DNA of 64,000 bases. Source: Macrostomum lignano (taxonomy: Eukaryota). Position 1 is the first letter of the stretch. Every line of letters begins with the position of its first letter. The notes under the pieces are model-generated. The model saw nothing but the letters and a program-made list of their open reading frames with translations, was not told where the DNA came from and made no database searches. Positions 26,166 to 52,893 of the stretch are shown piece after piece. A program made the position numbers and the translations under genes. The DNA lies in assembly GCA_002269645.1 (NCBI GenBank), contig NIVC01002272.1:40891-104890 (forward strand). The letters are read 5' to 3'.

Positions 26166-27825
26166 CTAGCATGGGACTGGTGGCTCTTCTACCGGACCGG
26201 GTGTATCTTCACCATTGCTCTCCCTATCGATATTCGATTCGTTGCCACCAGCTTCAGGTTCCGCTGGATCATCTTCGTCTTCATGGTATTCAGTGGAGGC
26301 GTCGGCCATCAATGCTATCTCGATTGGAATCCAGTCGGTGACTTCTGTTTGGCTGTGGATAAAAATAATTGAAGGTGCATGATTTTACCAAAGTTTTCCA
26401 AACCGAATGGGTACTTTCTGCCCTAATTGTAGCGCATACAAAGCTTTTCATCATCAGAAATCGATTGATAAGTTTTGTTCAACTCAAGATGCCAATTCTA
26501 CAAGTAGGTAATATGCATGTATTAACTAAAACACAACAAATATACTTACATCATCGGGTATCCGAATGGATTATTGGACTCCACTTGTGGGTGGCCCTGG
26601 CGCGGTATGGAATGTTCGCACAGCTCCATGTCGATGTCGACGCCTACTTCGTTGGGCCTGGAATAGTAATTTAAATGAAGGTTTTCACGTCGTATATGCG
26701 ACTAGATGCAAGTTCTTCACATGTATGCATGTTGGTGATGAAAAAACATTGTCAAAATAATACTTCTCTCCCGTGGCATCCGGCAGCTGAACTCCCAGCA
26801 GTCGCTCGACCTCCTGACGCACCTCGCCTCTCGCCCGGACGGCCAGCTCTCTCAGCCGGTCTCTGCTGCCGCCTTCGCCGATTCCCGCCTTCTCAGCCAG
26901 CAGCTTGACGCAGTCCAGGTTGTCGTGGTGCACCGCGATCATCAGAGGAGTCGCACCGCTGCTGTCCTCAGCATCGAGTCGAGCTTCGTGTTGCGAGAGG
27001 GCATCGAGGATGTCAGATCGACTGGCCATGGCTGCCAGGTGAGCCGCGGTTGATCCTTGCGCGTTGGGCTTGCTTGGGTCGCACTGACCGCTGGTCAGCA
27101 GGAAGTCCGCGATGTCCTTGAAGCCCTGACGACAGGCGTACATCAGTCCCGTGTTCCCCTGGTCATCTGGTTCGTCCAAGGGGATTTCTCTATCGGCAGC
27201 GAATTTGACTATTTCCAACTGACCTTTCTTTTTCGACCCGATGGAAGCCAAATGGACAATGCTTCTCTGCTTTTTATTCTTATGGTTCAAGTCGCAACCG
27301 AACTTAACTAGCAGTTTCATGGCGTCAATGTTGCCTTTGATTGCGCAGTCAGACAGTGGTGTGTCACCATCGCTATCAGCGATATCTAGCAGTGCGCCTT
27401 CCTCTTTGAGCATCGGCATGATGTGACGAAGATCTTTTGCGGCAGCTGCTTGCATGGGTGTGTTGCCGTGCTTGTTGACTGTATTGACGAAGTCGCCTCT
27501 GCCCAAATATTGCTTAACCAAGTGAAAGTTTCCTGACGACACAGCAACTGTTAACGGAAGCTCTCCGGTCTCAGGATCAACAGCGTCCATGTTGGCACCT
27601 CGCTTTTCCACCCAGTCCACCATGTGCTGGTTTCCTAGCTTCAGTGCCTGGTGCACGATGCACTCCGGAAGGGAGGGTTCAAGCTCATACAGTAGGTTCG
27701 CAATATTCTCATGCCCGTTTAGCACTGCACATTGAATCGGAGTAAATCTCGAAGCGTTTTCTTGGGCTAGAATTTCTGCTGTATTTCTATTTGCACCCCT
27801 GATGTGCTGCAGGACGTCCAAGTTG
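26166..27825 (-). CDS. Ankyrin-repeat gene, 3' part (end of giant exon plus two small exons)
   Basis: About 10 ankyrin repeats in 27825-26764. GT-AG introns 26763-26658 and 26549-26353 (both phase 2) join exons 26657-26550 and 26352-26166, giving an acidic tail that ends EEPPVPC*. Confidence 0.8.
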
Positions 27826-27839
27826 CACTGTTATGCATA

Positions 27840-28046
27840 AAGGTCCGAAAAAAGGTCCACTGAGGGTCCGAATGAGGAGGTCCGCACCGTACACATATAG
27901 GGACCTTCAGGTCCGAATGCACATAAGGTCCGAAAGTAGAGGACCGTATAAAGGTCCGCTAAAGGTCCGTATGAGAAGGTCCGCACCGTACATATATAGG
28001 GACCGTGAAGGTCCAAATGTATGGAAGGTCCGAAAGTATAGGTCCA
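27840..28046. repeat. Sub-terminal AGGTCCG repeats of the EnSpm element
   Basis: More than 10 AGGTCC(G) motifs here, with inverted GGACCT motifs at 38890-38946. CACTA elements typically carry such motifs as accessory-protein binding sites. Confidence 0.85.
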
Positions 28047-29224
28047 CAATAGGCACGGATGTCGCATTTTTCTGCCTGAGCGTGGCCCTATATAGCTGAC
28101 ATGCCTCAGTGGAAAATACCCGTTTAAAAAAAACCATGCAAGATCCTGATTCCAGTGAAGCTATAAGATGTTCATTAAACTGATGTGCATTGCATAGAAC
28201 GATAGTTTCCATAAAGATGGATAAAAATAAAAATGTATTTTTTATCAAGCATTATTACCATGCATGTTTAGATTGGAGCTTTACTGAATCAAATATTAAT
28301 GACAAAGCCGATTATGTAATACATGAATAACGGAAAAAGGAAATTACATGGCAAACTTGGTAGTAAATAAAGCAAAAGGGTTTAACATCAATTTTTTTTC
28401 ATTGATGAGCAACGCATGACTAATGGTACATTTCGATCAAACTGGAAAGAAATAAAGAGGAAATTGCTAGTTTCTTAAACGCGAAAGAGCAAACATTGAA
28501 AAATAATAAGTCAATGAAGCACAACAAGGGTTGAAAAAACGAATTTGAAAATACACAAATTTTGAGACAACTACGGGGTGTCCGCGCAATTTTTAAACTG
28601 AAATTCCAGGTTTTACAATACCCGGTTTAATAATCCATATTGGCAGAAAATACTTACTCGTGGCATTATGTATACCTGGGGCAATATTTAACACAATATT
28701 GTAATGTACACAACCGACTTACATTGCAAAAAATGTAAAACTCGAAGTAAAAAATAAAAAATGCGTCTTACAATAACTATTACAAATGTCCCCTCTTCTG
28801 AAAAATAGCAGTATTAAGAACATAACATAAAAAACGAACTTACTTTATGTTGACCTATGTTAAACATCGCACAAGAATTTATAATATAAGAGTAGGGCAA
28901 TGAAACAGAAGGGAAAGGGAAAACAGCACGCTTTGAGAGCAGGTCGCATCTGCAAGAAGGGAGAAGGGAGGCATGCAGGCCCAGTTAATCTGTAGAGTGA
29001 CTGGCTGGACATTTAGCTAGAAATAGAATAAGGGATAGACGCAGGCGTAAGCCATGGGATAGACCCCAGTTGGGTGGAGTCCTGCACTATATTCGTTATA
29101 AGGTGTACCTGAAATAATATGGGAGGGGGTGCTGGCCCAGCAACTGAGCATCTGCAGGTTTAGTGTGGTCAAGAGACGAGGCCAGGCAAATGAGGATCTG
29201 CATCGGAGTCACATGAACAGTCAA

Positions 29225-30856
29225 CTAACGAAAACTATCAACTAGCGAGGCAGCTGGCTTTCTAGACACTGCACATCGCTTGCGTAGGCGCGCGAGGACT
29301 TCAATAGCTTCAAGAAAAGCTTCCAGCTTAGGCAGATGCTGCAAATTAAAAGCAATAAAGCAGCAGATAAAAACGATAATGGTATCTGTCACCGAATTAA
29401 ATTGAAGACTTGCGCCGTTGACTGACACGCCCCACCAGGTTTCCTCCGCTTTGATCACGTGCACAGGCAGATCCGGAGAAAAAATTTCGGTGGGATCTAC
29501 TTTTAGGCGGCCAAGGAGGATGCAGACTGCCCCGGTGAGCTTCTCCTCCGCGCTAACGTCTCCATTGTCGGCTTTCAAAATAATTGGTGTGCACAGCCGA
29601 TGTCGTCGAAAACTATCGCGCTTGTCCCAGATGCGAATTAGCGCTACACGAATGTTTTTGCCGATGTCAGTAGGACCATCTGGGAGATAATAATCGTTTT
29701 TCTCGTTGGCATTATAAGCCTCGATCATTAGCCATGCTTCTTGCTCAATGACAGGTGCAAGAACTAATGGCTGATACAGCTCAATTTCCTCTGCGACGGT
29801 TAGGTTTTGACAGCGAGCAATTCGCATCGTAAATGTGTCTCGCATGCGTTCAAGCACGGACGGCATGGAAACGTCAGGCTGGCGAAAATTTGCGTTTAAC
29901 AGCAGACGAGCTGTCTCGTGGGTCTCGGGGATGTTTTCACAGTCGGCAAAATTAAAATTACAACTTTTTGCTAGGCTCACAACTGACCCACACTCATCGG
30001 CGTCCTCATTTTGCCGTCGTTTTTTAGACTTGGGATTCTGATTTTCATCAGGGTTGTCAGAGTCATCTGAGTTTTCAGAGTCATCATTGACGTCAGTGGC
30101 TGCCGAAGAATTAGCAGCATCAGCTGTAGCGGCCTCGGCATGCCTTCGCTTCCTGCCATGCTTCATCCGCATTTGCTGCACAAGTGGGCTGCTGCAGGCT
30201 GGGACTATTTTAGACCTGAACTCCTTCAATCGGCGACAGATCCTTTGACGCCAAAATGCTGTGCCATCAGCTGTTGCATCGCTCAGCGCTGGGTACGTCG
30301 TTACAATGGCCTTGCAAATGTCCTCTATTTGGCTGCACGTGAGATACGGGTCGTCGCAGTTCTTATAATTGTCGTAGACATCCTTAATAATATAGCGCAA
30401 AAAATTGTTGACGAAGGTTGCATTCGTTTTATACTTTGGCCCGACATCTGTGCTACTGCAGTTCTGGCGGACTTCTTGTAGACTTTTTGATAGTATGGGC
30501 ATGGATGGAAGCGAGTAAACAGTTGGCCATTTTTTAAGCAACGGTCTTTCAGGATCTTGCGGCTCGCTTGCTGCTGCCATTTCTTGATTGTCAAAACTAA
30601 TGTTGCTGCTATTGACTTCCCTTAAATTTTCTCGAATGGACTCCTCCCGCAGAAGAAAGATGATTTCAGACTTTTCTGCAGACAGAGTTGGCAAAAATTC
30701 GTCATCGTCGATGTCGTGTCCACCTGGTGTCACGAGACGAATTGAGGCAGAATATTCGATTCCCAGCTTTTCGCATCCTCGGATTTTCAATTCATGGAGA
30801 GTAGATGCACATACCAGCTTAAGCTGGGTTTTATCTTTGTTGCAGATTCGAAGCAT
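29225..30856 (-). CDS. EnSpm accessory protein (543 aa) with an N-terminal CIDE-N-like domain
   Basis: Intact ORF inside the TIRs. The N-terminal LRICNKDKTQLKLVCASTLHELKIRGCEKLGI..IRLVTPGGHDIDDDEFLPTL matches the CIDE-N pattern. The remainder resembles ORF2 proteins of animal EnSpm elements (from memory). Confidence 0.75.
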   Translation of the reverse strand: MLRICNKDKTQLKLVCASTLHELKIRGCEKLGIEYSASIRLVTPGGHDIDDDEFLPTLSAEKSEIIFLLREESIRENLREVNSSNISFDNQEMAAASEPQDPERPLLKKWPTVYSLPSMPILSKSLQEVRQNCSSTDVGPKYKTNATFVNNFLRYIIKDVYDNYKNCDDPYLTCSQIEDICKAIVTTYPALSDATADGTAFWRQRICRRLKEFRSKIVPACSSPLVQQMRMKHGRKRRHAEAATADAANSSAATDVNDDSENSDDSDNPDENQNPKSKKRRQNEDADECGSVVSLAKSCNFNFADCENIPETHETARLLLNANFRQPDVSMPSVLERMRDTFTMRIARCQNLTVAEEIELYQPLVLAPVIEQEAWLMIEAYNANEKNDYYLPDGPTDIGKNIRVALIRIWDKRDSFRRHRLCTPIILKADNGDVSAEEKLTGAVCILLGRLKVDPTEIFSPDLPVHVIKAEETWWGVSVNGASLQFNSVTDTIIVFICCFIAFNLQHLPKLEAFLEAIEVLARLRKRCAVSRKPAASLVDSFR

Positions 30857-30904
30857 GAATAAATATATGGGGTAATATTAAAGCAAATATGAAAAAGAAA
30901 AATG

Positions 30905-31091
30905 TTTTGTATTGTATTGTATTGTTGTATTGTATTGTATTGTTTTGTATTGTATTGTATTGTATTGTATTGTTTTGTATTGTAGAAAAATGTAATGGTT
31001 TTGTATTTTGTCATTCTGTTTGATTGTCTTAGTCATGACAAAATGTCCATGAGCCCTGTAGCACCCTCTCTCTCTCTCTCTCTCTCTCTCT
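30905..31091. repeat. (TTGTA)n and (CT)n microsatellites between the two EnSpm genes
   Basis: TTGTA run at 30905-30984 and CT run at 31066-31091. Confidence 0.9.
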
Positions 31092-32025
31092 TGCCCTGTT
31101 TGACAACATTTGCACACAACCAGAAGTAACTCTTTCAATGACAAAATCTACCTAGGCTGTCACAATGGTCCCAATGATGCAACAAAGATATCCTTGAGAG
31201 CAGCATAGAGACACTACCTTGACATTGACATGCATCAGATTACAGTTTGACGTGACATGTAAACAAGGATACAAATCAAACAAGAATCAACCCATTCCAA
31301 TTACTCCAAGAAATGAGGAGCTTCAATGTACACTATCAAGAATTTGTGCAAGAAGACATTCACCAAGGTGAGAAACCTTCTGGAATTCCTAGTATTTAAC
31401 TGGATGCCTATACCCTATACAAGGAAATGAGATACCTAGCTTTAACTACTAACTGCCATCAAGTCTACAAGCCCATTATAAAAAATGTTTGTGCTATTAT
31501 GATTGGCAACCTTTTTTGGTATCAAATTTAGAGGAAGTTATCAAAGATAATAGACCATAAAAAGAATAAGAGATAATTTAATAAGAAAAGACAAAAATAA
31601 AAATAATTCAAAGCTATGCATATAGCTAGCTTAGCAAGCATCAAGCATGCCTTTCAGCTTTGGAACCTAGAGAGCATAATTCTTTATTCAAGTGTCTGTC
31701 AGACTACCACATGGGAAATCTTCATAAAATGGACAATGCCAAAGACACTCAAGGTCAAGAAAAATGTCTATAAGTCATGGAGTCAAAATAGACTACTACA
31801 TGACACTAATAAAATTATGTTTATTATAACATTGATCTCTACCTTAAATTCTTTAAGCCCTGTTAGTTCTATTTATGGGGTTTTTATTTTCATATAACAT
31901 TGCAACAAAGGACTCAAGAAATCACTTGAGGAAAGACCAACTTAGCTAATTCTATAAACATTAAACATTTTTTTGTCTAGATAAAAACTTCTATCAATTA
32001 TCTTCCTCAAAAATAGGCATGAAAT

Positions 32026-34473
32026 TTAAAGCAGCATATTGATTGCCATTAAATAATACCAATGGAATAGGTTTATGAAATAAATATTCCCCTGGAAAAA
32101 CATCAGTGTTTCATCATTTTCAATAGTACATAAGAAGCAGTTTTGGTTACAAAAAAATGTTGATTTAACTTTTTTCCCAACTATTACCCACCTATTAGAT
32201 ACCTGCAAGATAGAGCTTACTAAAATGAATGACATAGTCTTTGGTGAATATATTGGTATAACATATCTTTTGCTTAGCATTGCAGCCTTATAGCAGAAGC
32301 CTTTATAAGTAAGTTCTTTTGTAGAGAAACAAAACTGTCCCAAATTATTAATATCAATATTTAACTTATTGGCTAGCTTTAACTGATCAGGAATAGAAAG
32401 AACATTCTCAAGCTTGATAGCTTCAGATTTATTAAATTGAAGGTCAACATATAAAAAATGTTTTATAATCAATGCCTTCTTTACTTGAAATTTCTTGGAT
32501 ACTGAATAAGCTACATTAATAAAGTTCTTTGTATGTCTACTTATTTCTTTTATAACCTGGTGCTCTGCTTCAGATCTCATAGTCCATAGATAATAAAGCC
32601 CATTATAACAAAAATACATATCTACATAATGACAAATATAATGCAATTTACATTTATACTTGGGATTATTATTTGTTAATTTATATATCACTTCAATTTG
32701 GGTTGCAATCAAATATCTAAAATAATCCTTGTTGGTATTTTCTAATGGCACTAGATTAAATAATATATCCAAAAATTGCCGATGATTTAAAAACAATTCC
32801 CAAACATGAGGATGATTATCAAAGCTTAAATTGTCAAACTTTTCACCAAAAATAAGACCAAAATATTGTAAAAGATGCATCATTTGGCTTGCTATACATG
32901 ACAAATGATAGTTTTGAATATGATACTTTGATATAGATGGGAAAGAAATATTTGGAATATAGGACACTTGCTTATTAATAAATTCTATATTTTCACCCAA
33001 TGTTTTTATTAGATACTCAAAAACTAGACAAACAACAAGATGAGACATACCTTCTAATATATCATGCATAATATCTGGTGCAAAAAAAAGAGGAAGATTA
33101 ATATACATTATATCAAATAATATAGATTGGTTAGATACAAAGCCATTACATTGATTTCTAGATGATTCAATAATTGATAAATGAGTTCGCATATCAAATT
33201 TAAATAAGCAACCCAAGTCTTCCAAATTTACTTCACATAATTGATTATATTTTTTAAGACAATATTTACATATATAGCCACCTGAAAAACATTTTTGTAA
33301 ACCTAATAGACCATGCATTGACAAATTATCTCTAGTAAAAAAGCATGCAATGACAGGTAACTTGATAGTTAAGCTAATTTTTACTTCATTTAAGTATAAA
33401 TCATTTAATTCCTTAACCAATGGTGCTAAAAAAAGTTAATACCTGCCTTTTTGACCATATTGTCAGTACAAACTAAATTTAGGAAACAGAGACTAGTTGA
33501 TGAATTCCAAGATTCAGGAATATTAAGAATAGTAAAATAAATAACATACAATTTATGCTTAGTCTTTACTGAACCAATAGGATTGCAAACTTCTATTTCA
33601 TCAGAATATAATTTTAAATAAATTGCATAATCAGATAATGGTAAAATATAGTTTAAAAAATATGAAAACTTAAAGAATGGATTGTTATTTTGATTTGGTG
33701 GCAATAGTAAACAATCTAAAATATATTCATTATTTGATATACTTTCAATAGTTTCCTTAATAGACACATATTGAAACTTGACCTTTAAATTAGAATCAAC
33801 AAATTCAATAGGCTGAACTAAATTATATTGATTTAGAAGAATTTCTAATAATTTTCTATCACTTAATAAATGCTCAATACTTATGTCTATCATTTCTTCA
33901 ATATTTAATATTTCAAGGCTTCTATGTGAGGCTAAGGATGGAAAATGTTCATTCAAATATTGTTTAAAAAGTTGCAAATAGGCCCTAACTATTTGCAAAA
34001 TCAGATAATAACTCTTTTACTAACTGTCCTATTTGCATAGCTTTATACTTTGGAACCAATAAGAAATCTTTAGTTTTTATATAAAAATGTACAAAACTTT
34101 CTGCCAACTGGACTCTTAAGTTTTCCCTACATATCTCACTAGTTTGGTCTTCTTGAATTTGACTAGGCCTATTTCTATTTTCATCTATTATAGTATTCAG
34201 CAAATGAATAGGATGGTCAGAATTATTTGCTTCACCTGATTCACTAGGGTCTTCTCTTTCCTCATTGACATTAGTACTAGTAGAAGGAATATTTAATTTT
34301 AAGTGCTTCCTACGAGCATGCTGCCTAAGTGCCTCTATAGTACTACAGCAATGAAAGCAATCTTTTACTGGGCATACAAAAGAAGACTGACCAAAAGAGT
34401 GGTATTTCTTAACATGGCTAATACATGCTAAAACATTGGGAAATGAAAAATTACATATTTTACAAAGAAGCAT
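32026..34473 (-). CDS. EnSpm/CACTA transposase (~815 aa), split by two single-base frameshifts
   Basis: N-terminal C2H2-like fingers, then LYSDEIEVCNPIGS, YFTILNIP, DNLSMH..CKYC, PDIMHDILEG and WTMRSEAEH. Both frame breaks lie in T homopolymers (~33990 and ~33430). Confidence 0.85.
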
Positions 34474-37400
34474 GCACTTGTAAATTCAAATAGGCCTAGG
34501 TTAGTAAAAAGCCTTATGGACAATAGGTCTTGAAATTAAGGACCTTAAAGTAATAAAATTATAGCTTGGATCAAGCCAAGCAATTTAAGCAATTGGATAG
34601 GAACAGGAAGGCAAGCAATAGGAAAGCAAGTTAACGTTTCAAAGAGGGTGCATTAACTGAGAAAGAAAGATACACTGATTAGTGATGACTATTCATGCAC
34701 TGCCGGGTCGTTCTCAAAGCTAGGTCACAACTTTTTGTTATTGCAAAAAAAGTTTATACATCGACCAATAATCGTACAAAAAAAATTATTTCGACAATTT
34801 CTGTAAGAAGCTGCTACTAAAACCACAAGAAAACTTGAAATTGAGAAGAAATCAAGGCTATTTGTTATTCTTTGTTGCGGAAAATAAACGACAAAAATAT
34901 TAAAGAGAAAATTAAATTTTCTTCTATTTTTATTTTAAATATGCAGTTAAATTTCTTTTGCAAAAATAAAAGAACAAGAAATTGACAAAGGAAATGTTTT
35001 TGAGCACAGCATTTTGTTACTCTGCTCTAAATCCCAGACATTTAAAATTATCGTGTGCAAAAAAGTGCGAAATTATTATAGCATGCACTCGAAAGGACTT
35101 CGATCAGTTTAACTAATCACTGAATTAAGAAGTCTAAATAAGTCTTGAAAGGTTGAATTAAAAATCAAGTTTTCACTATGTATATTTTCAAAGTCAAGAT
35201 GATTCGACAAATAAAGAATGTTCATTTTTACGGTGAATAGAATTGTTCATTTTTACATTAAATATAATAAAATCTAACTAATAATAGAAAAAGTCAGGGA
35301 ACTATCCTTGAACACCAAAAAGCACATTGTGGATTTAATATCAACTGCATGTTCCTTAATAAAGGAATTCGGATTCTAGTATATATTTGATTATTTGTAG
35401 CATAATTTCTGAAAACTATAACTTGCTTGATTTTACTTTAAGTACTTATTACATTAATACTTATACCAAAGCTACATGTACTTAAAATAAAAAATTATAG
35501 TTACTTATTAGACATTTTACTCCAATTAACTTGAAATAATTCAAATTTATTTTAATTAATTCATTTTTTGAAACTTTTTGGAAAATAGACAAAATTGAAT
35601 TATTTAATTACCAAAAACCTACTAGCTTAACTAAAATAGCAATTAGTCTTTAAGAAAAGAATTCACTTGTTAATTGAGAAAAATGAGGATGTGCGAGGTG
35701 TAAAAATGCGAAAGAGCATGCAGGAAACAGAGACAAACAAAAATGTAGGTAAAAGACACTGCACATGCACATAATATGATAACCAGACATAATGCGCACA
35801 CTGAAACGTAGCAATGACGCCCAAGCTTTTGATGATCACAAGCGAAAAGGCAAAACCCAGCCATCAATCAAAGAAGTAGACTTTAGCACGCATCTTGAGT
35901 GCATCACGCATTTTTTGCAGAGAAGCTCGAAAATTAACATTGTATTCTGTGCACAACCACCAACTGCGACAGGGTCTGCCGGGGGATTTGTGGGCACGCG
36001 GTCGCGGATACAAATCGGAGGAGTCGCTGACCATTCTGAAATTACTAGCTAGTACATGTAATTTTGTGTATTAATATATTTAGCCCGCTTTATTTCTATG
36101 CTCTCGTCCGCCTCTCGTTAATGCATCCCCAGCAGACTCTTGCAATAATCAAACTTATGATCGAACTATGCATGGCTTCCGTCCCTCGCTTTGAATCTCT
36201 CACCTCCCCATAGTTCCATCAACCTTACCTTAGTGGCTTCCTATGCAAAAATCATCCCTCCGCATCTTACACAGGCTACTTCAGGCTGTAGACTGTACTA
36301 CACTTTTACTTCAGTAATTAGTTGCGCTATAAGGAATCTACATGCATTTTGCTCGCAGCGCAGCGCGTTGCTCAAAGAAGTTTAGTTCTATCTAGATATT
36401 CTAGTAATTTCAGGTTTGTCGATAGACTAGAGCTCATGAGATGAGAATTCCATTAACTAGTACATTTAATATGAATGAACTGCGTGTGTGTGTGCTGTGC
36501 ATACATATGTATAATATACGAGTAGTTTATGGGCCAAACTATTGTGTGGCACAATTCTTGGCATCACTCAGCAGGCACAAGATGCAGTTAAGCAGCGCAC
36601 GAAAATTCTACAAAAGAAATTGAGCCTGGTTGAGGTGATGCGAGGAGGCAGATCCACACAATCTCAGTGAATACACCAGACTGCACCAGATACGAGTCCA
36701 GTCGAATGTGCGCACTGGTCTAAGCAGCACACGCATGTCCTTCTGACAATGACGGCACCTAGCTTCGTCCAAGCCTTTGCCAGCGTCACTGACAGCGTTA
36801 ATACTACCATGCAGTGCCACCTGCAGCACCGACAACGGCAATTCCTCCAGTTAGCCCACAACAGTGGCTAAACTGAGGGACAGGGAACCTACCCACAGAA
36901 GACACACACATACACACACAGCACCGGCAGCAGCACTCTGACAGCATAACCTAAAGCTCCATGAGCTCAGTTTTCAAGCATTGAAGAAGCAGAAGCAGTC
37001 ATCTTGGATCCAGGGATCAGGAAGAGTGTTGCATGTCCGACATGTGCTGTTTCCGTGGCAAAAGGTGATGGAGCAAATTAATCAACACTTACTATCTAGC
37101 TCGTATTAAGACTAAAAAACTGAGGCAAGCAGGGATTAAACCAAAGAAAATTTTTTACTATACTTTTTTACCATACTTTTACTATACTTCTATAGTATAG
37201 TAGAGAGGTACTGGTACTCTATTTAAATGCAGTAAGAAGTGAAACAAATTTATATATTTAATTATTAAATTAAATTAATTCAAGGTAAATAACTAATTTA
37301 ACCAATTTATTAGGAGTATTTATTATTATAATAAATTGATTTTTATACCTTACACGAAATAAGCTCTACATTCATTTCTTAGCTTGGGGCCCATCTGTAT

Positions 37401-38960
37401 AAGGTCAGTTTCTTCAAAATGCTGATTAATTAATTAAGGCCTGTTGTCTTTACTTAAATTTATAAGGGCATCTTAGAAGTTAATATTACTATATAATACA
37501 TGTATAATAGTATTACTATATTATAATAATATAGTTGCAATTTTAATGACTATTAAATAAGTTTAAATGCTTCCCCTATTGACTCTAAATATATGGTATC
37601 TTTCCCTTCAGAAAAAATTAGCATAGAATGACTTGATGAAAACAAAAAAATCATTTAGAGATACACATTTGCTGATCATTCAGGTCAAATTTCAAGGTCC
37701 AGTTTTGCACATGTTTCTCTGTAGCTTGGTTACAAGGATTTTAATAAAAATATAATAAATATGTCCAATGAACTAACTGATACATAGCCAAATTGAAGTA
37801 TTTTCAAAAACAAAAAAATCATTTGCTCAGTTTACTTTACTGGATATCTGTGTAAAATTTCAGCTCAAAAGGTGCTCCATGGAGAATGCTAGTGTGGTTA
37901 CAGGATATTTATTTTGTGCTTCAAAGTAGGAGTTTATTGCGATGCATGGTTGCTTTTAATTATTTTTATCAACAATAGTGCTCTATTTCATAACAATTTT
38001 TTACAAAAAGATAATAAGACATGTTTTTCTAATTATCTGCATCAAAATGTATCATTTTAAGCACGCATTCTAGACGTCAGCCGAAAAATACATTTTGTGA
38101 GACGCAAAGAGGCTATCCCACCGGAAATGCTAGGCGTACAGTTAAGCGTCTATAAAATCATTTGTAGTGCAGTTTATTGAGCTTTAAAAAATTCTTAAAT
38201 TAAATTTATATAAGCTTTCATTTTAAATGTAATATAGCAAGGTTTCAACACAACAACAACTTTTTTTAGCTACAGACATCTTGTAGTATCAAAAATTAAC
38301 ATCGGTGAAATGATTGAATTTGATTTTTTTCAACGCTAATTATCGCTTAATACCGCCAGATGATTAAAAACACTGTTGTATGATAAAGTTCAACCCAAAA
38401 ATTATCTTTATTGACAGATAAAAGTGTCCTATTATTTTCAATATGGCAGTAACAATAGTAAATGTTTGGAAAATTGTTAAAATTTTTGCTCCTCCTAGAA
38501 TTTGCGAACGACCCTGCCACAAGCTATAATATCAAAAGCTATCGAGTTTTGTATCGAGTATTGTAACTTTGTTCAGCCCATTTCATGCAATTTTAAACTT
38601 AAAAAGCTTAAACAAAAAAGTATATTAGTAAGTTAGGTGAGAAAACTATTTTATTCTTTTATACATTTCATGAGTTTTCATAATTTTTGCTGCTAGCAAA
38701 TTTTGTAGCGCCTTTAATTGTGTTGCTGGAAGGAACGGATGCTAAAAGGTATGGCTCGGTCTTGGATTCAGGGAATGTACAGATTGCCCTCGCACAAAAG
38801 TATTTGTTTTCTGAAAAGGTTCATCCAACTTAATTTCATTAACCCTTCAATTTCTAGGACTAAAGAAACCATTTTTGCAATTTCCTGTTTTGGACCTCAT
38901 CTGACCAAGAGGTCCGATTATTACATTCGGACCTTTCATGGACCTCTTTGCATAACAGTG

Positions 38961-41531
38961 TGCCTTCAATGGCTGCATAGTGAGCACAGTTCATGCCGTC
39001 TTTACTTTTGATGGCTGCAGAGAACCCCTTCTGCTCAAGAAACTTGAACACCTCCAGGTTTCCTTTGTTCGCTGCCAGGTGTAGAGGTGAGCGGGCCTCT
39101 GGTTCAGCAGTGTCTGGTTGGCAGGAGCTTGGACAGTTGTCGCAGACCCACTTCACCAGCGCCAGCTTGTTTTCGATTGTAGCGACGTGCAAAACGGAAT
39201 GTTGCTTGTTGTTTCTGAGGTCCGTGCGGCATCCGAGTTGGAGCAGCATTCTCGCCATGTCCAGCCTGCCTCTCATGATGGCCAAATGAAGCGCTGTGTC
39301 TCCGTCGGCATCCACAGAGTCTACAATCTCTTTTGCTAACTCACGGTTGAATTTGATGAACTCTTTGAGCAAGTTTGCGTCACCAAGCAAAATTAAGTGA
39401 TGTAATAGAGTCATGTCTTTTTGCTTTTTCTTGCCGTCGAAGCCAAAAGTCACCAGATACTTGAAGTGATCTAGGTTTCCTGCCTTGAATATTGCCTTTA
39501 AAGTAACATTCTTAAGAGCCACGTCTTTGTCGAAGTGACCGTTCTGCTCTTGAAGAATATGAGTAATAACGGTTTCGTTCAGAGCCACAGCAACAGACAT
39601 AGGCGTGTCTCCTGTCACACTATAGACGTTTGGATTTGCACCTTTTCGCAACAGAAGTTGCACAGCACCGATCTTCCCGTGTCTGATTGCGGTGAAGATC
39701 GGGGTCTTTCCATTGCTGTCTGTGAGGTTTGGAGCAGCACCGTTTTTCAAAAGCAGATTCATCACTTTCCGACTACCACAGGCGCAAGCAAAGTGCAAGG
39801 CACTTCTTCCCTCTTTGTTGACTTCATTGGCGTTCAGCCCAGCCTTTACAACACTTGTAATTTGCTTCATCAGTTCTTTCTTGCTGACGCAACCTTCTGG
39901 TAAACTCTTCTTGGTTCCCTGACTTTCAATTAGCTTGATCACTCGACTCTGATCTTTCTGCGAAGATGATCGCTTGATTCTATTTATCTGCTGCTGCTTG
40001 GATTCATTTTCCCTCTTAGCTCTGTCTGGGTGTGACGAGGAATTTTTGCTGCTCAGAATGTGCAGCACGTTGGTGCCTTCACCGTCCTTTTCGCTAACTC
40101 GAATTTCCGCCCTCAGCAGCAAAGGAATCAAACTCAGATGCGACTTCTGAGCTGCGATGTGAAGGGAGTTTTGTCCGCGAGCATTTTTATAGTTAATGTT
40201 GGGCCGCTGCTCGAGCAAAAACTTCAAAACTTCCTCTTGGCCGTTCAGACAGGCAATGGTGAGGCAGTTCTCTCCGTCAGCTGTGCGGCTGCTGATCGAC
40301 AACTGGCCTTTGTACTCTTTGAGCAGGATAACATTTCCCTGCTGACAGGCGTAGTGAGCAGCGCTCCACGAATTGTTATCGAACATTTCGGTCAAACTTA
40401 CTCCCCTGCTGCTGAGCAGAGACAGAATTGAAGTTCTGTTCAGTTTAACACATAATAGAACTGGTGATGTCCCTGACTCGTCAAGCGCATTGGGATCTAG
40501 CCCTTTGCTGATGAGAAAGTCAATGACTGACTCATTGTTGTCATTTATTGCGAAGTGTAGAGCGGTCTTTATCGAGTTGTCGGTTCTGCTCAAGTTGCAT
40601 CCCTGGCTGCAGAGAAAGCTAAGAAACTCCTCATTCTGCTTGGCTGCAGCCAGCATGATTGGAGTGACTCCGTCGAGGTCGGCTTTGTCCAGCTCAGCAC
40701 TGTGCTCGTGAAGCAGCTTCAAAATTTCCAACGATCCGTAATAGCATGCAAAATGTACTGGGGTTGTTCCTTTGTGCGTGACCGTGTTTACGTCTGCGCC
40801 TTTGCTGATCAGGAACTCGGTCATCGCAGGGTTCTTCTTAAAGCATGCAATCATCAGTGGAGTGATTCCCATCTTGTCCTCCTGGTCAATTCGGCAGCCG
40901 AACATGGCAAAGTAGCGAACGATTTTTGCATTACCGGTCTTCGCTGCCAGGTGAAGAGCATTTTCGCCGAGGAAATTTCTCCTGTTCACATCGGCATTGA
41001 TGGCATTGCTGATGATGGCGAGGGACTCGCTGCCCTGAGCAGCGCACAGCATGAACGGTGTTGACCCGGTCTTGTCCTCCGTTTCGGTAGGAGATGTGGC
41101 TTCCAGCAGGACCATTGCTGCATCATTGTCTGCTTTGGTGCAAGCAATGTGCAGTGCGCTCTGCAGTTTGTCATTGGTGGCTTGCAAATCCTTATCACCT
41201 TGCAAGACCAAGTACTTTAAAATTTCGAGGTTACTAGTATGAATTAGACAAACAAGGAGGGGTGAGTTTCCTTCTTCATCAACGACACTTAAATCCGCAC
41301 CATTCTTGTGCAAATGCTTGACAATATCCAAACTGCCAGTGAGCACTGCATAATGCATAGCAGTCCGTCCCATACTATCTTGGTGATTAACGTCACAAGC
41401 GTGTGGTGTATCGGTCAGATACTTTGCTGCATCGAAAGCTTTGGCCCTGACAGCCATTATGAGCGGAGTCGTCCCAGTGATGTCTGCTTCTTCCAGTGCC
41501 ACGTTTTTCTGTCGCAAATACCTCAGCAGAG
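38961..41531 (-). CDS. Ankyrin-repeat gene, middle part of the giant exon (between the two transposons)
   Basis: About 857 open codons of tandem ankyrin repeats (TPLIMA, TAMHYA, TPFMLC, TALHFA, SALHFAC and others), in frame with both flanking parts once the elements are removed. Confidence 0.9.
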
Positions 41532-44500
41532 CACATGGTGACGCGAATTGCGCAAAATTGCACAAAATTACGTGAGAAAATTGAAAAAAATTGGGCAAGA
41601 ATTGCGCAATAATTGCACTCAAATTGTTCATTAAGTGCAATAAAATTACACGAAATCACGCTTAAAATTACAATTTAATTGAGCATAAAATTGCAATTCA
41701 AGAGCTTAGAAATTGCCGTTGGAGTGGCACTTCAGAATATTGATACGCTCGTATTATAGTGCAGGTAAATTTTAAGACTTCCCAAATTTAGCACTCGATC
41801 TGCAATTTTCATTATATCTGCTCAGAATTGAACCCAGAAAAGTAATTAAGACACAGTAAAAACCACCTGTGTTATTTCGGAATACATTAAATTTTGCAAT
41901 TTTTCAATAAGATGTTATAATCATTTTTCAATCTAATACATTTCATTGTAATTTTTTATTTCACTTTACTACATATTAAAAAATAAAACTACAAACAGAT
42001 ACTAAATATAAACCTTTACGGGCAAAAAACGATGCATAAGATACAAGAAAATACTTGCATAGATTAGTAAAAATTATTATTATTAAAATATTACTATTTA
42101 ACTATTTAGAAAAATTATTATTAAACCATGAATAAGCACACTGAACATTGAAACTAATTGAAAAATTCTTTTACATTCGAAGTGCAAAAGCGTTCTAAAT
42201 AAACATAATTTATTAGTTAAACAATATTTTAACTTTCAGGGGTGCTGGCTGCATCAGCATGTTTATCTAAGCAGTTAAAACTTTAAAGATGAAGCCTTTT
42301 ACACATCTATGATGAAGCTTTTGGATACTTTTAAGTTTAAAACCTTTCAAGATTCCGAAATGAGACTTTCTAAGAACCCACAGGTAATTATTTTGTAGAA
42401 TTGAATATTTAAAAAAAGATCCCAGATAAAGTTAGGATTCACTTTTCGCTTATTTATAATTTTTTATCGCCTTTCCATGATCTTACTTAGACATTACTTT
42501 TTAAGGCTACCTAACATTGCCAGCCTGAAGCTCGTAAGAGCTTCCAGAAGTCAATTACAGTGATTACCTTGCAGTGATTTAGTGATTGCTTATTTAATGT
42601 TATTCCTATAGGCTATAACTGATACTTAATGGTTTCCAGTATTGTCTTTCTTACGCTTGCCAGAAATGTCACGAAACATTTGATTTAACGATGCTCGCAC
42701 AGATCTCCAGTTGTAGGCTGCAAACCATTCGGACAAAACAGCTCGAAGCTCCTCGACAGATTGCTCGTCCATCGCAATGCGCTCCGTTAAGCCATTCAGC
42801 TCAATAATTGCAGAAATGCAATACTCCTCACCGAAGCGTCAAAGAACATACTTTATGTACATTAGAGTTTATGTACATTGGCCCGCTATGAGAATTCAAT
42901 TTAGGAAACCATAGAAGCACAAACTCGAAAGGCAATGGTTGGTTAAATTTGTCTGCAGCATGCCTTCGCTTTTGTGTGTTCATTTCTTGGCATGAAGAGA
43001 AACACAATTGAGTATTGAGTTGAAGTTGCACTGCTTTATAATTATAAAAGAGTATTATATTATAAATAATAATTATAAAATAATTATATAATTAATAATT
43101 ATAAAATAATTATAATAGATTATAAAAACAAAATAGCTTTTTGAGCCACTTATTTTATTTATTTATATAGATTTCATTTTAGAATTTTGGCATACCATTA
43201 ATTTGTATATGGAATCATAAAATATCATTTTGAAAACTTGCAACCAAGATTTTCATAAAACAATCTAGATATAGTGATATGATATATAGTCTAACAGACA
43301 ATATATCAATAGAAGCCAAAATATTAAATACCTTAAAATAGTAGCTAATTAGTAAACAGAAGCTATACAAATGATTATACGCTCATAGCTAGGCCTAGTC
43401 ATTAAGTCATTGATTAAGTTAGTAATCTAGTATATACCTACTTACTCAACTATCTTTTGCATATATTATGCTGTACCATTTAATAACCTGATAAGCTTCA
43501 GTTTGACTTTTAGACAATACATCAATTAATTTAATTAGAAAAAAGTAAATGTTTTTAAAATAGCTATAGCTACATTAATTAAAAACCTATTTGTAGGCCT
43601 AGCTAATTGCCTATTAAACAATGATGTTCAATTTCATGCTTCACTAATTTAATTTAATGTATAGCTCCTATAAATAGTAGAGCTACTAAAATAATTTTGA
43701 ATTGAAATACATAATGTAATGACCAATGACGATGTAATTACAATTAAAGTATAACTTATTAATACAAAATTTTAGTCTACAAAGTGCCAATGCAGTATTA
43801 AAATTAATTGTATGCACTTGCCTGATACTGAGAGAGCTCTAGTCCTAGATATAAGAAAATGATAGAAAAGTATAATTACATGTATGAAACTAAAAGATAA
43901 AGTTCAAATACAGAGTTGACAAAACATTAACAATGACATAGTACATAGACAATTGGTAGCTTTTAGTATTTTATAAAAGGAGCTATGAAAAATGAATTGG
44001 ACAAACTCCAATAATGCTAGCTAGACTAGTCAATACTTATTAGTAATAGCTAGCAATAATAGGACTAGAATTAGATAAACTAAAAAACTTTTTTTGAGTT
44101 TTACAATCTTAAGTCAAGACTACAAGAGTAAATAGCAAGGCTAAGTTCTTGTCATTTACGACAAGTGAAAAGCAAGTGGCATTACTAGCCTTCAATTTCA
44201 ATTACAATGATAAAAAAGCTAGTAAAAACAACAAAGGAGAAGGCAACAACAACAAGCAAGAGCAAGAAAGCAGCAATACTACGTCGACCAATATCGGAGC
44301 AATAAGGCGCGCTGCTTTTTAAATTTAGCAAAGTTGTTACACTTTTAAACAAAAAATTCCTAAAATGGTAGATACACTTTCTATTGAATATACAAAGCAG
44401 ATAGATTTCTAAGAAAAATCAATTTTATTTGTTTGTAAGAATTTAGAACACTTTAAATTTGTTCAGGGAGTCGTGAAAATGCAATCATGTAAGTACAACT

Positions 44501-44945
44501 TATATTGTGCATATTTGCAGCTTATATAAATCATTTTATACCTCAATTCCGAAGACTTTGTCTATACTATGCTTCAATATATTGCAATTCATTTTCTGTA
44601 CTCGTCAGAATCTGCATGTAATCGTTAAAAAATAATTTCTTTTGGCAATCTACATGTAATAGATGCGATGTAAATGTACCAGTAGCAAGGATATTTTTTA
44701 TCTACTACTATACAAGTAATATTTAAAGCATATTTGAAATTGAAAAAATTGCAATATTCTTTGCAATGCGATTGCAAGAATTTCACTTTCTTGATATGTC
44801 TTTAACACTACTTACATAAGCATCTAAAGCGCACATGAAAGTTGAGAAAATTGCAAGTTCTATGAGAAAGAAATTGCAATTAAGTCAATTATTGTGAATA
44901 AAATTGCAAGTTTCAAATTCTTTCCTCAATTTCGGGTATCATGTG
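41532..44945. mobile_element. Non-autonomous CACTA-like element, 3.4 kb, inserted in the ankyrin exon
   Basis: Ends CACATG..CATGTG (6 bp perfect, imperfect to ~19 bp), 2-bp TSD AG (41530-41531, 44946-44947), and dense AATTGC(A) sub-terminal repeats at both ends. AT-rich, with no long ORF. Confidence 0.88.
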
Positions 44946-46277
44946 AGGTTCGTTGTTCGTCGCGGCGGCGTGAAAAGCAACAGTTTTGCCGTTCCGATCT
45001 TTTGTAGTGAGTTTGATGCCTGCTTCTGCCAGTAGACGGACCATCGAGAGTGATTTGTTTCTAGCTGCAGCAAGAATTGCCGTATCACCTGTATGCAGAT
45101 TGGGAGCCACTAAGTCTGCGTTTTTCTCTGCCAGAAGCAGCAAAATTTCCTCAAGCTTGCAGCTTGCTGCCCTGAGGGCTGGAGTCACCCCTTTATGATT
45201 TCTGTGACTCGGATTGCAGCCTTTCTCCAGAAGAAAGTCCACCAACTTTACTGGCCCTCTCTGACACGCTACAAGGAGTGCAGTTTCTCCGTTATCTGGG
45301 TTAGCCTCATCAATGGTCCCTGTGTTCTCAGCCAGGTATTTTAACACCTCAAGATTCTGCTTCCTAGCAGCAATGTGAGACAGCGGTCCCATCCTCTTGC
45401 TTGACTCGAGTGAGCAACCCTGCTCAACTAAGTAGCTAAAGAGTTCATAGGTCCCATATAGAATTGCAAGTTGGACAGGTGTGTCTCCATCTTCATCTGC
45501 TTCGAACAGAGGAGCTCCTTTCTTACGAAGAAGCTTCAGAACTGTACAGTGTCCATTGAGAATAGCGACTTTGGCAATCTCGTCATTAGTTGTGACGTCA
45601 CAGCCACTTTCCAGCATGTACTTCACTGTATCGTAGAATCCATTTTGCACGGCTCCGCGCAGAGGGCTTCGCCCATCGGCTGTGTTTTCATCGAGTTTCA
45701 CATCGAGCAACTTGAGTATGTCGGTGTGACCAAGAAGGCCTGCTTCACACGCCACCCGCTGCTTGCTACTGTGAGTCACGTCGCAGCCACGATCTTTGAG
45801 GAATTGCACCACTTCTATCCAATTTTTCTTTGTTGCATTCAATAAAAGACTAGTCAAGTGCTCCTCGCAAATTTTCCGAATGCAGGACTTCCGCTGCTCA
45901 AGCTTTTCAGCAATTTTTACGTGTCCTTTCTTCAGAGCATAAAATACAGCAGACCTACCACCGCTGTCTGTCTTAGAAACGTCAACTTCTTTTGAAAGCA
46001 GAGTATTGATGGTGGCTTCGTTTCCCTTCTGGCTGGCGCACATCAGAGGTGTGATGCCCTGCTTGTCACTCCGCTCTGGGTCGGCTCCTTTGCTCAGCAG
46101 AGTGTTAAACACATCTTGATGACCGCCCAGAGCTGCTAAGTGCAGGCCTGTTCTGCCTTGATCGTCTGAGACGTTTGGTTCAAGATTTTGCGTCAGATAC
46201 TTGTATACAGTCCGGTTGTCTCCTGCCATAACTGAAGCAAAGAATATGTCTCTAGCGGCTGTTGGTGCAGCTGCCAT
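44946..46277 (-). CDS. Ankyrin-repeat gene, 5' part of the giant exon
   Basis: First ATG at 46277 (AGAGTCATGG; the listed ORF start at 46343 is TTG). About 13 ankyrin repeats. In the present sequence the frame reads into the element and stops at 44915-44913. Confidence 0.88.
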
Positions 46278-46911: not shown

Positions 46912-47135
46912 CTCTTGGTGGGCTCTACCTGTCTCTTGGTGGGCGCCCCTGTCTCTTGGTTGGCGCCCCTGTCTCTTGGTTGGCGCCCCTGTCTCTTGGT
47001 TGGCGCCCCTGTCTTTTGGTTGGCGCCCCTGTCTCTTGGTTGGCGCCCCTGTCTCTTGGTTGGCGCCCCTGTCTTTTGGTTGGCGCCCCTGTCTCTTGGT
47101 TGGCGCCCCTGTCTCTTGGTTGGCGCCCCTGTTTC
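46912..47135. repeat. 20-bp minisatellite (~10 copies) between divergent genes
   Basis: Unit TGGCGCCCCTGTCTCTTGGT. Confidence 0.95.
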
Positions 47136-47540
47136 TTTCACTTAGGTCCGGGAGGAATGCAAGTTTTACTCGTATGAAGGGGCCGTACCTTTGAAGGGAC
47201 AATTATGAGGGGTTCCCCTTTTTGGGTACGCCACAGGTTTTCCTTACATTTCAACTATTGATAATTTATTTTTATACTTTTATACATTTTGTAGGCCGTA
47301 AAAATTCTACTGTAAGTAGGATATGCACACAACGAAGCTGTTTTTGAAACTCCGCATATTTTGTTGAAATTTTATCTGCGTCTGGATGCAAGCCTCATCC
47401 AATCCCAAAGGCAGATCTCGAGCAGCGATTTCCATTGGTTTTTAGCTTGTCATGCCTTCGCTATAAAACCCGCCGCTCTCATGAGCTTAAAATTTGATTA
47501 ACACGATTCTAAAAGCTTGTGACAGTTGAAAATATAAAAA

Positions 47541-49566: not shown

Positions 49567-49710
49567 AGAGAGGGTGAAGCTGACTGAGGAGAGGGTGAAG
49601 CTGACTGAGGAGAGGGTGAAGCTGACTGAGGAGAGGGTGAAGCTGACTGAGGAGAGGGTGAAGCTGACTGAGGAGAGGGTGAGGCTGACTGAGGAGAGGG
49701 TAAAGCTGAC
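49567..49710. repeat. 21-bp minisatellite (~6.5 copies)
   Basis: Unit GAGAGGGTGAAGCTGACTGAG. Confidence 0.92.
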
Positions 49711-49980
49711 TTTAGAGGTGGGTATAGGTAGATGTACGTATTTACTCGTGAGCTTGTGTGTAATGTTGAATATGAAAAATTAAGAATAATTTTATTGGGT
49801 GGAGTCATTTGTTGTCTATGGAAGTTGAAAATAATATAGAATTAGCAAGCATATTTAAATCAAAAAGTCAACCAGAGTAAAGAGCCACAGTGCAGTTGCA
49901 CTTCAGGTAATCACACATAAGCGCTGATATACATGATTTTTGCTTTATGTTCTTCGTAACTGACTGCGTCAAAGCAGACC

Positions 49981-52862: not shown

Positions 52863-52893
<31 letters not shown>

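What the first reader, a model, noticed from the sequence alone, without database searches (positions are those of the whole stretch)
26166..46277. An ~1,750-aa ankyrin gene is interrupted twice in one exon by CACTA elements yet otherwise undamaged
Seen: deleting 41532-44945 plus one AG gives ..HAAATNNEP|LLRYLRQKNVALEEADITGTTPLIMA. Deleting 27826-38960 plus one TG gives ..HYAAIEG|NLDVLQH. The rebuilt CDS (5-kb exon plus two small exons) has no stop or frameshift. Inference: a first insertion should have released the gene from selection, so two very recent hits, an insertion hotspot, a redundant haplotype or paralog, or removal of the elements by excision or splicing is required.
Basis: partly seen in the sequence, partly recalled or inferred. 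Interest (0 to 1): 0.8.

Follow-up and report, generated by a model that had tools for sequence, protein, structure and literature searches.

The report
Transposon-broken spare ankyrin gene in flatworm
One of three copies of a giant ankyrin-repeat gene in the flatworm Macrostomum lignano has recently been split by two jumping-gene insertions; the other two copies are intact, so this looks like an ordinary recent knockout of a spare gene.

Summary
Removing 41532-44945 plus one AG and 27826-38960 plus one TG restores a stop-free 5,256-nt CDS on the minus strand: 1,751 aa, three exons, all ankyrin repeats.

The window is the last 64 kb of Macrostomum lignano Mlig_3_7 contig NIVC01002272.1. Two other contigs of that assembly carry colinear, annotated, uninterrupted paralogs, Mlig023247.g1 and Mlig030120.g1. 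Both are empty at both sites, which proves two real insertions with 2-bp target duplications.

E1 (11.1 kb) belongs to the CACTA/Mirage/Chapaev (CMC) clade:
- CACTG termini, a 21-nt TIR and AAGGTCC subterminal repeats.
- A Tnp2-like transposase, here frameshifted twice.
- A CIDE-N second ORF and a nested 3.8-kb element.
- A 98.4-99.6% identical copy elsewhere in the genome.

E2 (3.4 kb) is non-autonomous, with CACATG termini.

About 85% of this neopolyploid genome is present in three copies. Lineage dN/dS for the broken copy (0.31) matches its intact paralogs (0.25 and 0.33). An intact ORF only requires that the first hit is younger than about 0.3-0.5% neutral divergence.

No canonical GT-AG pair within the range scanned around either element's ends restores the ancestral sequence. 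Verdict: an ordinary, recent insertional knockout of a redundant paralog. Expression and allele frequency remain untested.

The parts
44946..46277 (-). Ankyrin gene exon 1, part a (ATG at 46277; codons 1-444). AG at 44946-44947 is one copy of the E2 target-site duplication.
41532..44945 (.). E2: 3,414-bp non-autonomous DNA transposon. It has CACATG...CATGTG termini, AATTGC subterminal repeats (12 seen against 1.1 expected) and a 2-bp TSD (AG on +, CT on the coding strand). It has no transposase remnant.
38961..41531 (-). Ankyrin exon 1, part b (codons 445-1300). AG at 41530-41531 is the second E2 TSD copy and TG at 38961-38962 is one E1 TSD copy.
27826..38960 (-). E1: 11,135-bp CMC-clade (CACTA/Mirage/Chapaev) DNA transposon. 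It has 21-nt TIRs (27826-27846 and 38940-38960), AAGGTCC subterminal repeats and a 2-bp TSD (TG on +).
32029..34473 (-). E1 transposase gene: N-terminal C2H2 finger, the motifs LYSDE / RDNLS / CxxC / DIMHDILEG, and homology to Tnp2 and Plavaka. This copy is broken by a private 7-bp insertion (33981-33987) and a 1-bp deletion (33434).
29225..30856 (-). E1 second ORF, intact, 543 aa, with an N-terminal CIDE-N domain. It is 98% identical to the annotated M. lignano gene Mlig011704.g3.
34705..38514 (.). A 3.8-kb element nested inside E1 and absent from the other E1 copies. Its TIR is GGGTCGTTC and its 4-bp TSD is GGCA.
26764..27825 (-). Ankyrin exon 1, part c (codons 1301-1653 and the first two bases of codon 1654). 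The donor AA|GTATTA lies after 26764. TG at 27824-27825 is the second E1 TSD copy.
26550..26657 (-). Ankyrin exon 2 (108 nt).
26166..26352 (-). Ankyrin exon 3 (187 nt, including the TAG stop at 26166-26168).

Best explanation
This locus is one of three diverged paralogous copies of a giant all-ankyrin-repeat gene in the neopolyploid flatworm Macrostomum lignano (Mlig_3_7 contig NIVC01002272.1). Two independent cut-and-paste DNA transposons landed in its 5-kb first exon, each duplicating 2 bp of target. Either insertion truncates the protein, after codon 444 and after codon 1300. The two sister copies, Mlig023247.g1 and Mlig030120.g1, are intact and transcript-annotated, so losing this copy probably costs little. 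The insertions are young relative to the point-mutation clock, so the rest of the ORF has not yet decayed. Shown: the insertions, the TSDs, the empty sites, the identity of the genome, the presence of the paralogs, the classification of E1, and a second, near-identical E1 copy. Inferred: that this copy is now non-functional or silent, and that redundancy is why it is tolerated.
For: (1) The rebuilt ORF is exact.
(2) The window is 100.000% identical to NCBI GCA_002269645.1 contig NIVC01002272.1 over 21.6 kb.
(3) L001 (NIVC01001545.1, Mlig023247.g1, 1,764 aa) and L003 (NIVC01001542.1, Mlig030120.g1, 1,806 aa) are colinear with the window over the gene and about 8-10 kb upstream. Their alignments break at exactly the two insertion points. 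L001 reads ACCT|CTGCTG and GGCA|ACCTG where the window has CT[E2]CT and CA[E1]CA.
(4) E1 has a second copy in a 6PGD intron (L002 and L005), 98.4-99.6% identical, with the same termini and a TG TSD. Its transposase has about 2,000 homologues. Some of those hit Pfam Tnp2, Plavaka or DUF4218, and the conserved D, D, CxxC and E residues are present in the window copy.
(7) About 85% of the DV1 genome is in three paralogous copies, and indels make up 36% of aligned paralog length (PMC10733133).
(8) Lineage-specific dN/dS is 0.31 for the window copy, against 0.25 and 0.33 for the intact paralogs, so no long relaxed phase is visible.
(9) P(ORF intact) is 0.39-0.52 at 0.1% neutral divergence and falls below 0.05 only beyond about 0.3-0.5%. 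The two 6PGD subgenome copies differ by only 0.26%.
(10) Neither the transcript-based GenBank annotation nor the ML2 UniProt set yielded a protein more than 87% identical to the rebuilt product.
Against: - Expression, allele frequency and zygosity of the insertions were not testable here. The absence of an annotated gene is weak evidence, because the GenBank set excluded transcripts that overlap repeats.
- The paralogs are 6-20% diverged at the DNA level and 83-87% identical at the protein level. That far exceeds the 1-2% typical of M. lignano subgenome copies, so functional redundancy is assumed rather than shown.
- Two large insertions in one 5-kb exon with no other lesion is somewhat improbable under a uniform rate. 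A rough local estimate gives 2-9%.
- If the 0.74% divergence and 9 indels between the window E1 and the 6PGD-copy consensus (an unrooted split, so not all on the window branch) arose in situ, the gene ORF would be expected to be broken. This requires that much of that divergence lies on the 6PGD branch or that an already defective E1 copy was mobilised in trans.
Confidence: 0.8

Rival explanations
1. The insertions are low-frequency or heterozygous alleles, or a single haplotype captured by the PacBio assembly. An uninterrupted allele of this same copy still exists in DV1 or in wild worms and keeps the ORF under selection.
For: The ORF is perfectly intact and the lineage dN/dS of 0.31 is no higher than in the intact paralogs. 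The DV1 line retains heterozygosity and has a variable karyotype (PMC10733133; PMC5730564).
Against: No protein more than 87% identical to the rebuilt product appeared, although short fragments would not have been listed. The dedicated junction-peptide search is void because it failed to return even P0001. DV1 is highly inbred.
Confidence: 0.15
2. The elements are removed from the pre-mRNA as de facto introns, as with dSpm and Ds insertions in maize exons or with introner elements. The copy would then still make a near-normal protein.
For: Cryptic in-frame GT..AG pairs exist. For E1, GAG|GTCCAT ... AACAG|TG would leave 21 nt, or 7 extra codons, without a stop (sequence reading; enumeration).
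Against: No GT-AG pair within the range scanned around either element's ends (donor -90 to +150, acceptor -150 to +90 nt) restores the ancestral sequence. E2 has no GT in its first 40 nt and no AG at its 3' end. The in-frame pairs listed match at most 7 of 9 donor-consensus positions, and the acceptor contexts shown for them are not pyrimidine-rich. About one third of random pairs are in frame anyway. Introns of 11 kb and 3.4 kb are far above the 1.1-1.4 kb average.
Confidence: 0.03
3. The elements are excised from somatic or germline DNA, either by programmed elimination or by frequent transposase-mediated excision, which restores the gene.
For: Both elements have intact termini, and the E1 family has at least one other recent copy. 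E1's second ORF is annotated from transcripts.
Against: In the library searched, no paper's title or abstract links Macrostomum to DNA elimination; the six full-text hits were not read. The transposase is frameshifted twice in the window copy and interrupted by nested insertions in both other copies. Cut-and-paste excision normally leaves footprints rather than a precise restoration. No comparison between tissues was possible.
Confidence: 0.02

Closest known systems
CMC (CACTA/EnSpm-Mirage-Chapaev) superfamily of DDE cut-and-paste transposons
   Same: E1 has 5'-CAC...GTG-3' termini, short TIRs with subterminal repeats and a short TSD within the clade's 2-5 bp range (PMC12730594; PMC4079192). 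[quoted passage not shown] It also has a two-ORF layout like En/Spm.
   Different: The termini are CACTG rather than CACTA, and the TSD is 2 bp rather than the 3 bp of plant CACTA or the 3-4 bp of Chapaev. The second ORF carries a CIDE-N domain, which I have not seen described for this superfamily (own knowledge, no literature check). E2 has no transposase, so its placement rests on termini and TSD only.
Insertional pseudogenisation and fractionation of duplicated genes after polyploidy
   Same: One of several paralogous copies is disabled by TE insertion while the sister copies stay intact. The host genome is a recent polyploid in which paralogs differ mainly by large indels (PMC10733133).
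   Different: The three copies here are much more diverged (6-20%) and more mosaic than typical M. lignano subgenome copies. The disabled copy carries no point lesions at all.
Maize dSpm/Ds insertions in exons that are spliced out of pre-mRNA (e.g. bz-m13), and introner elements
   Same: A DNA transposon with CAC-type termini sits inside a coding exon of a gene that is otherwise intact.
   Different: Those cases depend on splice sites at or near the element ends. Here no canonical pair in the range scanned gives precise removal, and there is no transcript evidence. The comparison rests on my own knowledge of those systems.
Ciliate internal eliminated sequences
   Same: Transposon-like DNA interrupts an ORF and is flanked by a short direct repeat, one copy of which would remain after precise removal.
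   Different: The host is a metazoan with no nuclear dimorphism. The flanking repeats are ordinary TSDs of different sequence. The elements are large, multi-copy TEs, one copy of which lies in an intron. No elimination machinery or evidence is known for this organism.

Membership tests
CMC (CACTA/Mirage/Chapaev) DNA transposons: E1 | 5'-CAC...GTG-3' termini within terminal inverted repeats | tested here: met
   CACTGTTATGCA... / ...TGCATAACAGTG, 21-nt TIR with 19/21 matching. The same termini occur in the L002 and L005 copies.
CMC (CACTA/Mirage/Chapaev) DNA transposons: E1 | Short target-site duplication (2-4/5 bp) | tested here: met
   A 2-bp TSD is proven by the empty paralogous sites in L001 and L003 (CA on the coding strand). 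The 6PGD-intron copy has a TG TSD.
CMC (CACTA/Mirage/Chapaev) DNA transposons: E1 | [quoted passage not shown] | tested here: inconclusive
   The window protein hits PF02992 at E=6e-4, below the gathering score. Of 30 homologues, 4 hit PF02992 (best 1e-6), 2 hit Plavaka and 1 hits DUF4218. The invariant D, D, C..C, H, D and E columns are present in the window copy. No phylogeny against Repbase references was possible.
Plant-type CACTA/En-Spm sensu stricto | CACTA termini and a 3-bp TSD | tested here: not met
   The termini are CACTG (E1) and CACATG (E2), and both TSDs are 2 bp.
CMC-like non-autonomous element: E2 | CAC...GTG termini, a short TSD, and a cognate autonomous partner | tested here: inconclusive
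   The termini and the 2-bp TSD are met. There is no transposase remnant and no other copy or partner in the data held.
Introner / TE-derived spliceosomal intron | Splice sites at or created by the element ends, so that removal restores the ORF | tested here: not met
   No GT..AG pair in the range scanned (donor -90 to +150 nt, acceptor -150 to +90 nt around each end) gives zero extra nucleotides. Only cryptic in-frame pairs were found.
Programmed DNA elimination (IES-like) | Present in germline DNA and precisely absent from somatic DNA | not testable with these tools
   No tissue-resolved reads are available. The literature search returned only six full-text co-mentions, none in a title or abstract.
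Recent insertional pseudogene of a redundant paralog | A disabling lesion plus intact paralog(s) in the same genome | tested here: met
   Two exon insertions are present, and the intact paralogs P0001 and P0126 lie on other contigs of the same assembly.
Recent insertional pseudogene of a redundant paralog | Loss of expression or relaxed constraint on the disabled copy | tested here: inconclusive
   The copy is not annotated in the stretch examined (window 19225-40820), and a truncated N-terminal product is not on record. Lineage omega is 0.31, no higher than in the paralogs, which is what a very young lesion would give.

The most novel reading that the evidence does not exclude
The interrupted copy is still used. 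E1 and E2 would be removed, by non-canonical or cryptic splicing or by somatic excision driven by active family members, so that a 1,750-aa or near-normal ankyrin protein is still made. That would explain why a twice-hit ORF shows neither decay nor excess dN/dS.
Probability: 0.04. Interest if true: 0.6.

Novelty: new member of a known kind. Interest (0 to 1): 0.15.

Why it matters
As a phenomenon it is ordinary: TE insertion disabling one copy of a multi-copy gene in a repeat-rich neopolyploid. It has modest value in three ways.
- It gives base-exact, empty-site-validated boundaries and TSDs for two Macrostomum DNA transposon families. One is a 2-bp-TSD CMC element with a CIDE-N second ORF, and the family looks recently mobile.
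- It is a concrete example of how M. lignano subgenome copies diverge by large insertions.
- It is a caution for knockout and transgenesis work in this model: paralogs can differ by whole-exon disruptions.

Tried and rejected
- **Junction-spanning peptide search.** It was meant to find intact or spliced window-type products in Logan and NCBI data. It returned nothing, not even P0001, so the negative result is void.
- **Exact-product look-ups.** Look-ups of window ORFs, including the truncated N-terminal product, found nothing on record.
- **Window from a sister species.** Considered because the best protein hit was only 87% identical. Rejected after a 100% match to an Mlig_3_7 contig.
- **L001 and L003 as alleles.** Rejected: same assembly, 6-20% divergence, different 3' ends.
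- **Precise splicing.** Rejected on splice-site enumeration.
- **Assembly artefact.** Rejected because both elements have perfect TSDs against empty sites, and E1's boundaries are reproduced at an independent locus.
- **E2 as a deletion derivative of E1.** Rejected: no sequence similarity and no transposase remnant.
- **Pfam on single E1 ORFs.** This gave nothing. Only the joined transposase gave a weak Tnp2 hit.
Full report
**1.
The gene lies on the minus strand. On the + strand, E1 begins CACTGTTATGCA at 27826 and ends TGCATAACAGTG at 38960, with TG on both sides. E2 begins CACATGGTGA at 41532 and ends TATCATGTG at 44945, with AG on both sides. Deleting each element and one flank copy yields one 1,716-codon open stretch.

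Adding two small downstream exons with canonical GT-AG introns gives a 5,256-nt CDS of 1,751 aa. It runs from the ATG at 46277 to the TAG at 26166. Exon 1 is 46277..26764, exon 2 is 26657..26550 and exon 3 is 26352..26166. The product consists of ankyrin repeats throughout and has no other Pfam domain.

**2. Organism and locus.**
The best protein match is Macrostomum lignano BOX15_Mlig023247g1 (P0001), reported at 87% identity and at 83% over the full length by BLASTP. A locus fetched through the transposon's second ORF (L004) is 100.000% identical to window 19225-40820. The window is therefore the last 64 kb of contig NIVC01002272.1 of assembly Mlig_3_7 (GCA_002269645.1).

**3. Empty sites and paralogs.**
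Two other contigs of the same assembly carry uninterrupted, annotated paralogs.
- L001 is NIVC01001545.1, gene Mlig023247.g1, 1,764 aa.
- L003 is NIVC01001542.1, gene Mlig030120.g1, 1,806 aa.

Both are colinear with the window through the gene and about 8-10 kb upstream. Their alignments break at exactly 44945/41531 and 38961/27826.

At the E2 site L001 reads ...GCACCT|CTGCTGAGG, where the window reads ...GAACCT[E2]CTCTGCTGAGG. At the E1 site L001 reads ...ATGGCA|ACCTGCAC, where the window reads ...AAGGCA[E1]CAACTTGGAC. Both are therefore genuine insertions, each with a 2-bp target-site duplication (CT and CA on the coding strand).

**4. What the elements are.**
E1 (11,135 bp) has these features:
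- 21-nt TIRs with 19/21 matching, and AGGTCC/GGACCT subterminal repeats clustered at both ends.
- A transposase gene at 34473..32029, with an N-terminal C2H2 finger and the motifs LYSDE, RDNLS, CxxC and DIMHDILEG.
- A second, intact 543-aa ORF at 30856..29225 with a CIDE-N domain.

The transposase has about 2,000 homologues, mostly around 800 aa long, at E<=1e-3. Of the 30 I scanned, 4 hit Pfam Transposase_21 (Tnp2), 2 hit Plavaka and 1 hit DUF4218. The window protein itself hits Tnp2 only weakly, at E=6e-4.

Taken with the CAC...GTG termini and a short TSD, this places E1 in the CACTA/Mirage/Chapaev clade. That clade is described as having 5'-CA..TG-3' termini, 2-5 bp TSDs and a C(2)C motif (PMC12730594; PMC4079192). 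E1 is not a plant-type CACTA element, which would have CACTA ends and a 3-bp TSD.

A second E1 copy lies in an intron of a 6-phosphogluconate dehydrogenase gene. It is present on both subgenome contigs L002 and L005, has identical termini and a TG TSD, and is 98.4-99.6% identical to the window copy.

Relative to those copies, the window's E1 differs in three ways:
- A private 7-bp insertion (33981-33987) shifts the transposase frame.
- A 1-bp deletion (33434) shifts it again.
- A nested 3.8-kb element sits at 34705-38514, with TIR GGGTCGTTC and TSD GGCA.

The 6PGD copies carry their own nested insertions. One, found only in L002, is TA-flanked and mariner-like.

E2 (3,414 bp) has no ORF and no transposase remnant. 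Its termini are CACATG...CATGTG, its ends are rich in AATTGC, and no other copy occurs in the data I hold. I call it a non-autonomous, probably CMC-like element.

**5. Is there a paradox?**
According to Zadesenets et al. 2023 (PMC10733133):
- About 85% of the DV1 genome is present in three paralogous copies.
- These copies differ by 2.2% SNPs.
- Indels make up 36% of aligned paralog length.

Wudarski et al. 2017 also report large-scale redundancy in this assembly (PMC5730564). A disabled third copy is therefore what one expects to find in this genome.

*Selection history.* Between the window and L001, dN/dS is 0.34 with dS 0.27. Lineage-specific dN/dS by three-way parsimony is 0.31 for the window, 0.25 for L001 and 0.33 for L003. 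The broken copy thus evolved under the same purifying selection as its sisters for nearly all of its history, and no long neutral phase is detectable.

*Time limit from the intact ORF.* In this CDS, 3.7% of single substitutions create a stop. I took the indel-to-substitution ratio seen between E1 copies, 0.1-0.17. With those values P(ORF intact) is 0.39-0.52 at 0.1% neutral divergence and 0.03-0.09 at 0.37%. It falls below 0.05 beyond roughly 0.3-0.5%.

*Yardstick.* The two 6PGD subgenome copies differ by only 0.26% inside E1, or 0.11-0.15% per lineage. In that interval one of them gained a 1.3-kb insertion within about 11.7 kb. From that single event, my rough estimate is 0.2-0.5 insertions expected in a 5.2-kb exon over 0.13-0.3% divergence. 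That makes two hits unusual, at a probability of about 2-9%, but not extraordinary, particularly for a case picked out precisely because it looked odd.

*One tension remains.* The window E1 differs from the consensus of the 6PGD copies by 54 substitutions and 9 indels in 7,280 nt. With no outgroup these changes cannot be divided between the two branches. If they had all accumulated in place, the gene ORF should have broken by now. The simplest reading is that many of them lie on the 6PGD branch, or that an already diverged, defective E1 copy, perhaps already carrying its nested insert, was mobilised in trans.

**6. Removal hypotheses.**
I enumerated all GT..AG pairs with the donor between 90 nt before and 150 nt inside each element's 5' end and the acceptor between 150 nt inside and 90 nt beyond its 3' end. 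None restores the ancestral sequence. E2 has no GT in its first 40 nt and no AG at its 3' end.

Only cryptic in-frame pairs exist, as chance would give. The in-frame pairs listed match at most 7 of 9 donor-consensus positions, and the acceptor contexts printed for them are not pyrimidine-rich. For example, reading the E1 ends directly, GAG|GTCCAT...AACAG|TG would leave 21 nt.

The literature search for Macrostomum and DNA elimination returned six full-text co-mentions, none in a title or abstract; I did not read them. I cannot test expression or somatic excision with these tools. The one search aimed at junction-spanning products failed technically. Exact-product look-ups were negative.

The interrupted gene is not annotated within the stretch of the contig I could inspect, window 19225-40820. 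This is weak evidence, because the GenBank gene set is derived from transcripts and also excludes transcripts overlapping repeats.

**7. Verdict.**
This is an ordinary, recent, double insertional knockout of one of three paralogous ankyrin genes in a TE-rich neopolyploid flatworm genome (confidence about 0.8). A close variant, that the insertions are a segregating or heterozygous allele, remains open (about 0.15). Splicing or excision rescue is unsupported (about 0.05 combined).

The phenomenon is already known. The two transposon families, especially the 2-bp-TSD CMC element with a CIDE-N ORF, are new members of a known kind. Interest is low, at 0.15.

Noticed in passing
window 29225-30856 (-); L002 10001-11611; L005 10001-11044: The CMC transposon E1 carries a second ORF with an N-terminal CIDE-N domain, the interaction domain of the apoptotic DFF40/DFF45/CIDE proteins. 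The transcript-based annotation calls it a gene at three places (Mlig011704.g1, Mlig011704.g3 and one unnamed). Several differences between copies are R to H or R to Q, a CpG-type change. I have not seen a CIDE-N accessory ORF described for this transposon superfamily.
   Followed up: partly
window 26166-54440 compared with L001 and L003: The three paralogous ankyrin loci form a mosaic. Window-L001 identity is 96-99% far upstream, 91% just upstream and in the 5' CDS, 94% mid-CDS and 80% in the 3' CDS, with no match in the last two exons. L001-L003 identity is about 94% throughout the gene. L003 holds a relic of the window-type 3' end about 3 kb downstream of its own gene. This suggests recombination or gene conversion among copies, and far more divergence than the 1-2% typical of M. 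lignano subgenome copies.
   Followed up: partly
L002 1280-12994 and L005 2646-13019: The same E1 insertion in a 6PGD intron is shared by two subgenome contigs that differ by only 0.26% inside it. That insertion therefore predates this subgenome split. L002 alone gained a 1.3-kb TA-flanked, mariner-like element (TIR CGAGGGGTGATCAAAAAGTTCTGCAA) inside the transposase. A 3.1-kb insertion is shared by both contigs.
   Followed up: yes
window 34705-38514: A 3.8-kb non-coding element is nested in E1, with perfect 9-nt TIRs (GGGTCGTTC) and a 4-bp TSD (GGCA). It is absent from the other E1 copies. Its family was not identified.
   Followed up: partly
window 56200-61800 (-): A GC-rich (57-65%) non-LTR retrotransposon is present, with ORFs for an AP-endonuclease, a reverse transcriptase and RNase H. 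Its reading frame is split over several ORFs.
   Followed up: no
window 46912-47137, 49556-49711, 50466-51542, 51991-53238: There are tandem arrays upstream of the gene. A 20-bp unit is repeated 11 times directly upstream, whereas L001 has about 50 copies. A 21-bp unit is repeated 7 times and a 40-bp unit 27 times. (TGGA) is repeated about 311 times, which produces the strong GC skew at 50-54 kb.
   Followed up: no
E1 insertion sites (window 27824-27825 and 38961-38962; L002 1278-1279 and 12995-12996): Relative to element orientation, the two independent E1 insertions have TSDs CA and TG. These are the same double-stranded dinucleotide. It may indicate a TG/CA target preference, but with only two sites the chance probability is about 1/16.
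   Followed up: no
tool behaviour: A 425-aa query made of three concatenated segments of the rebuilt protein did not return P0001, although its first 150 residues lie in the roughly 90%-identical N-terminal segment. Negative results from that word-indexed search should not be trusted for chimeric or short queries.
   Followed up: no
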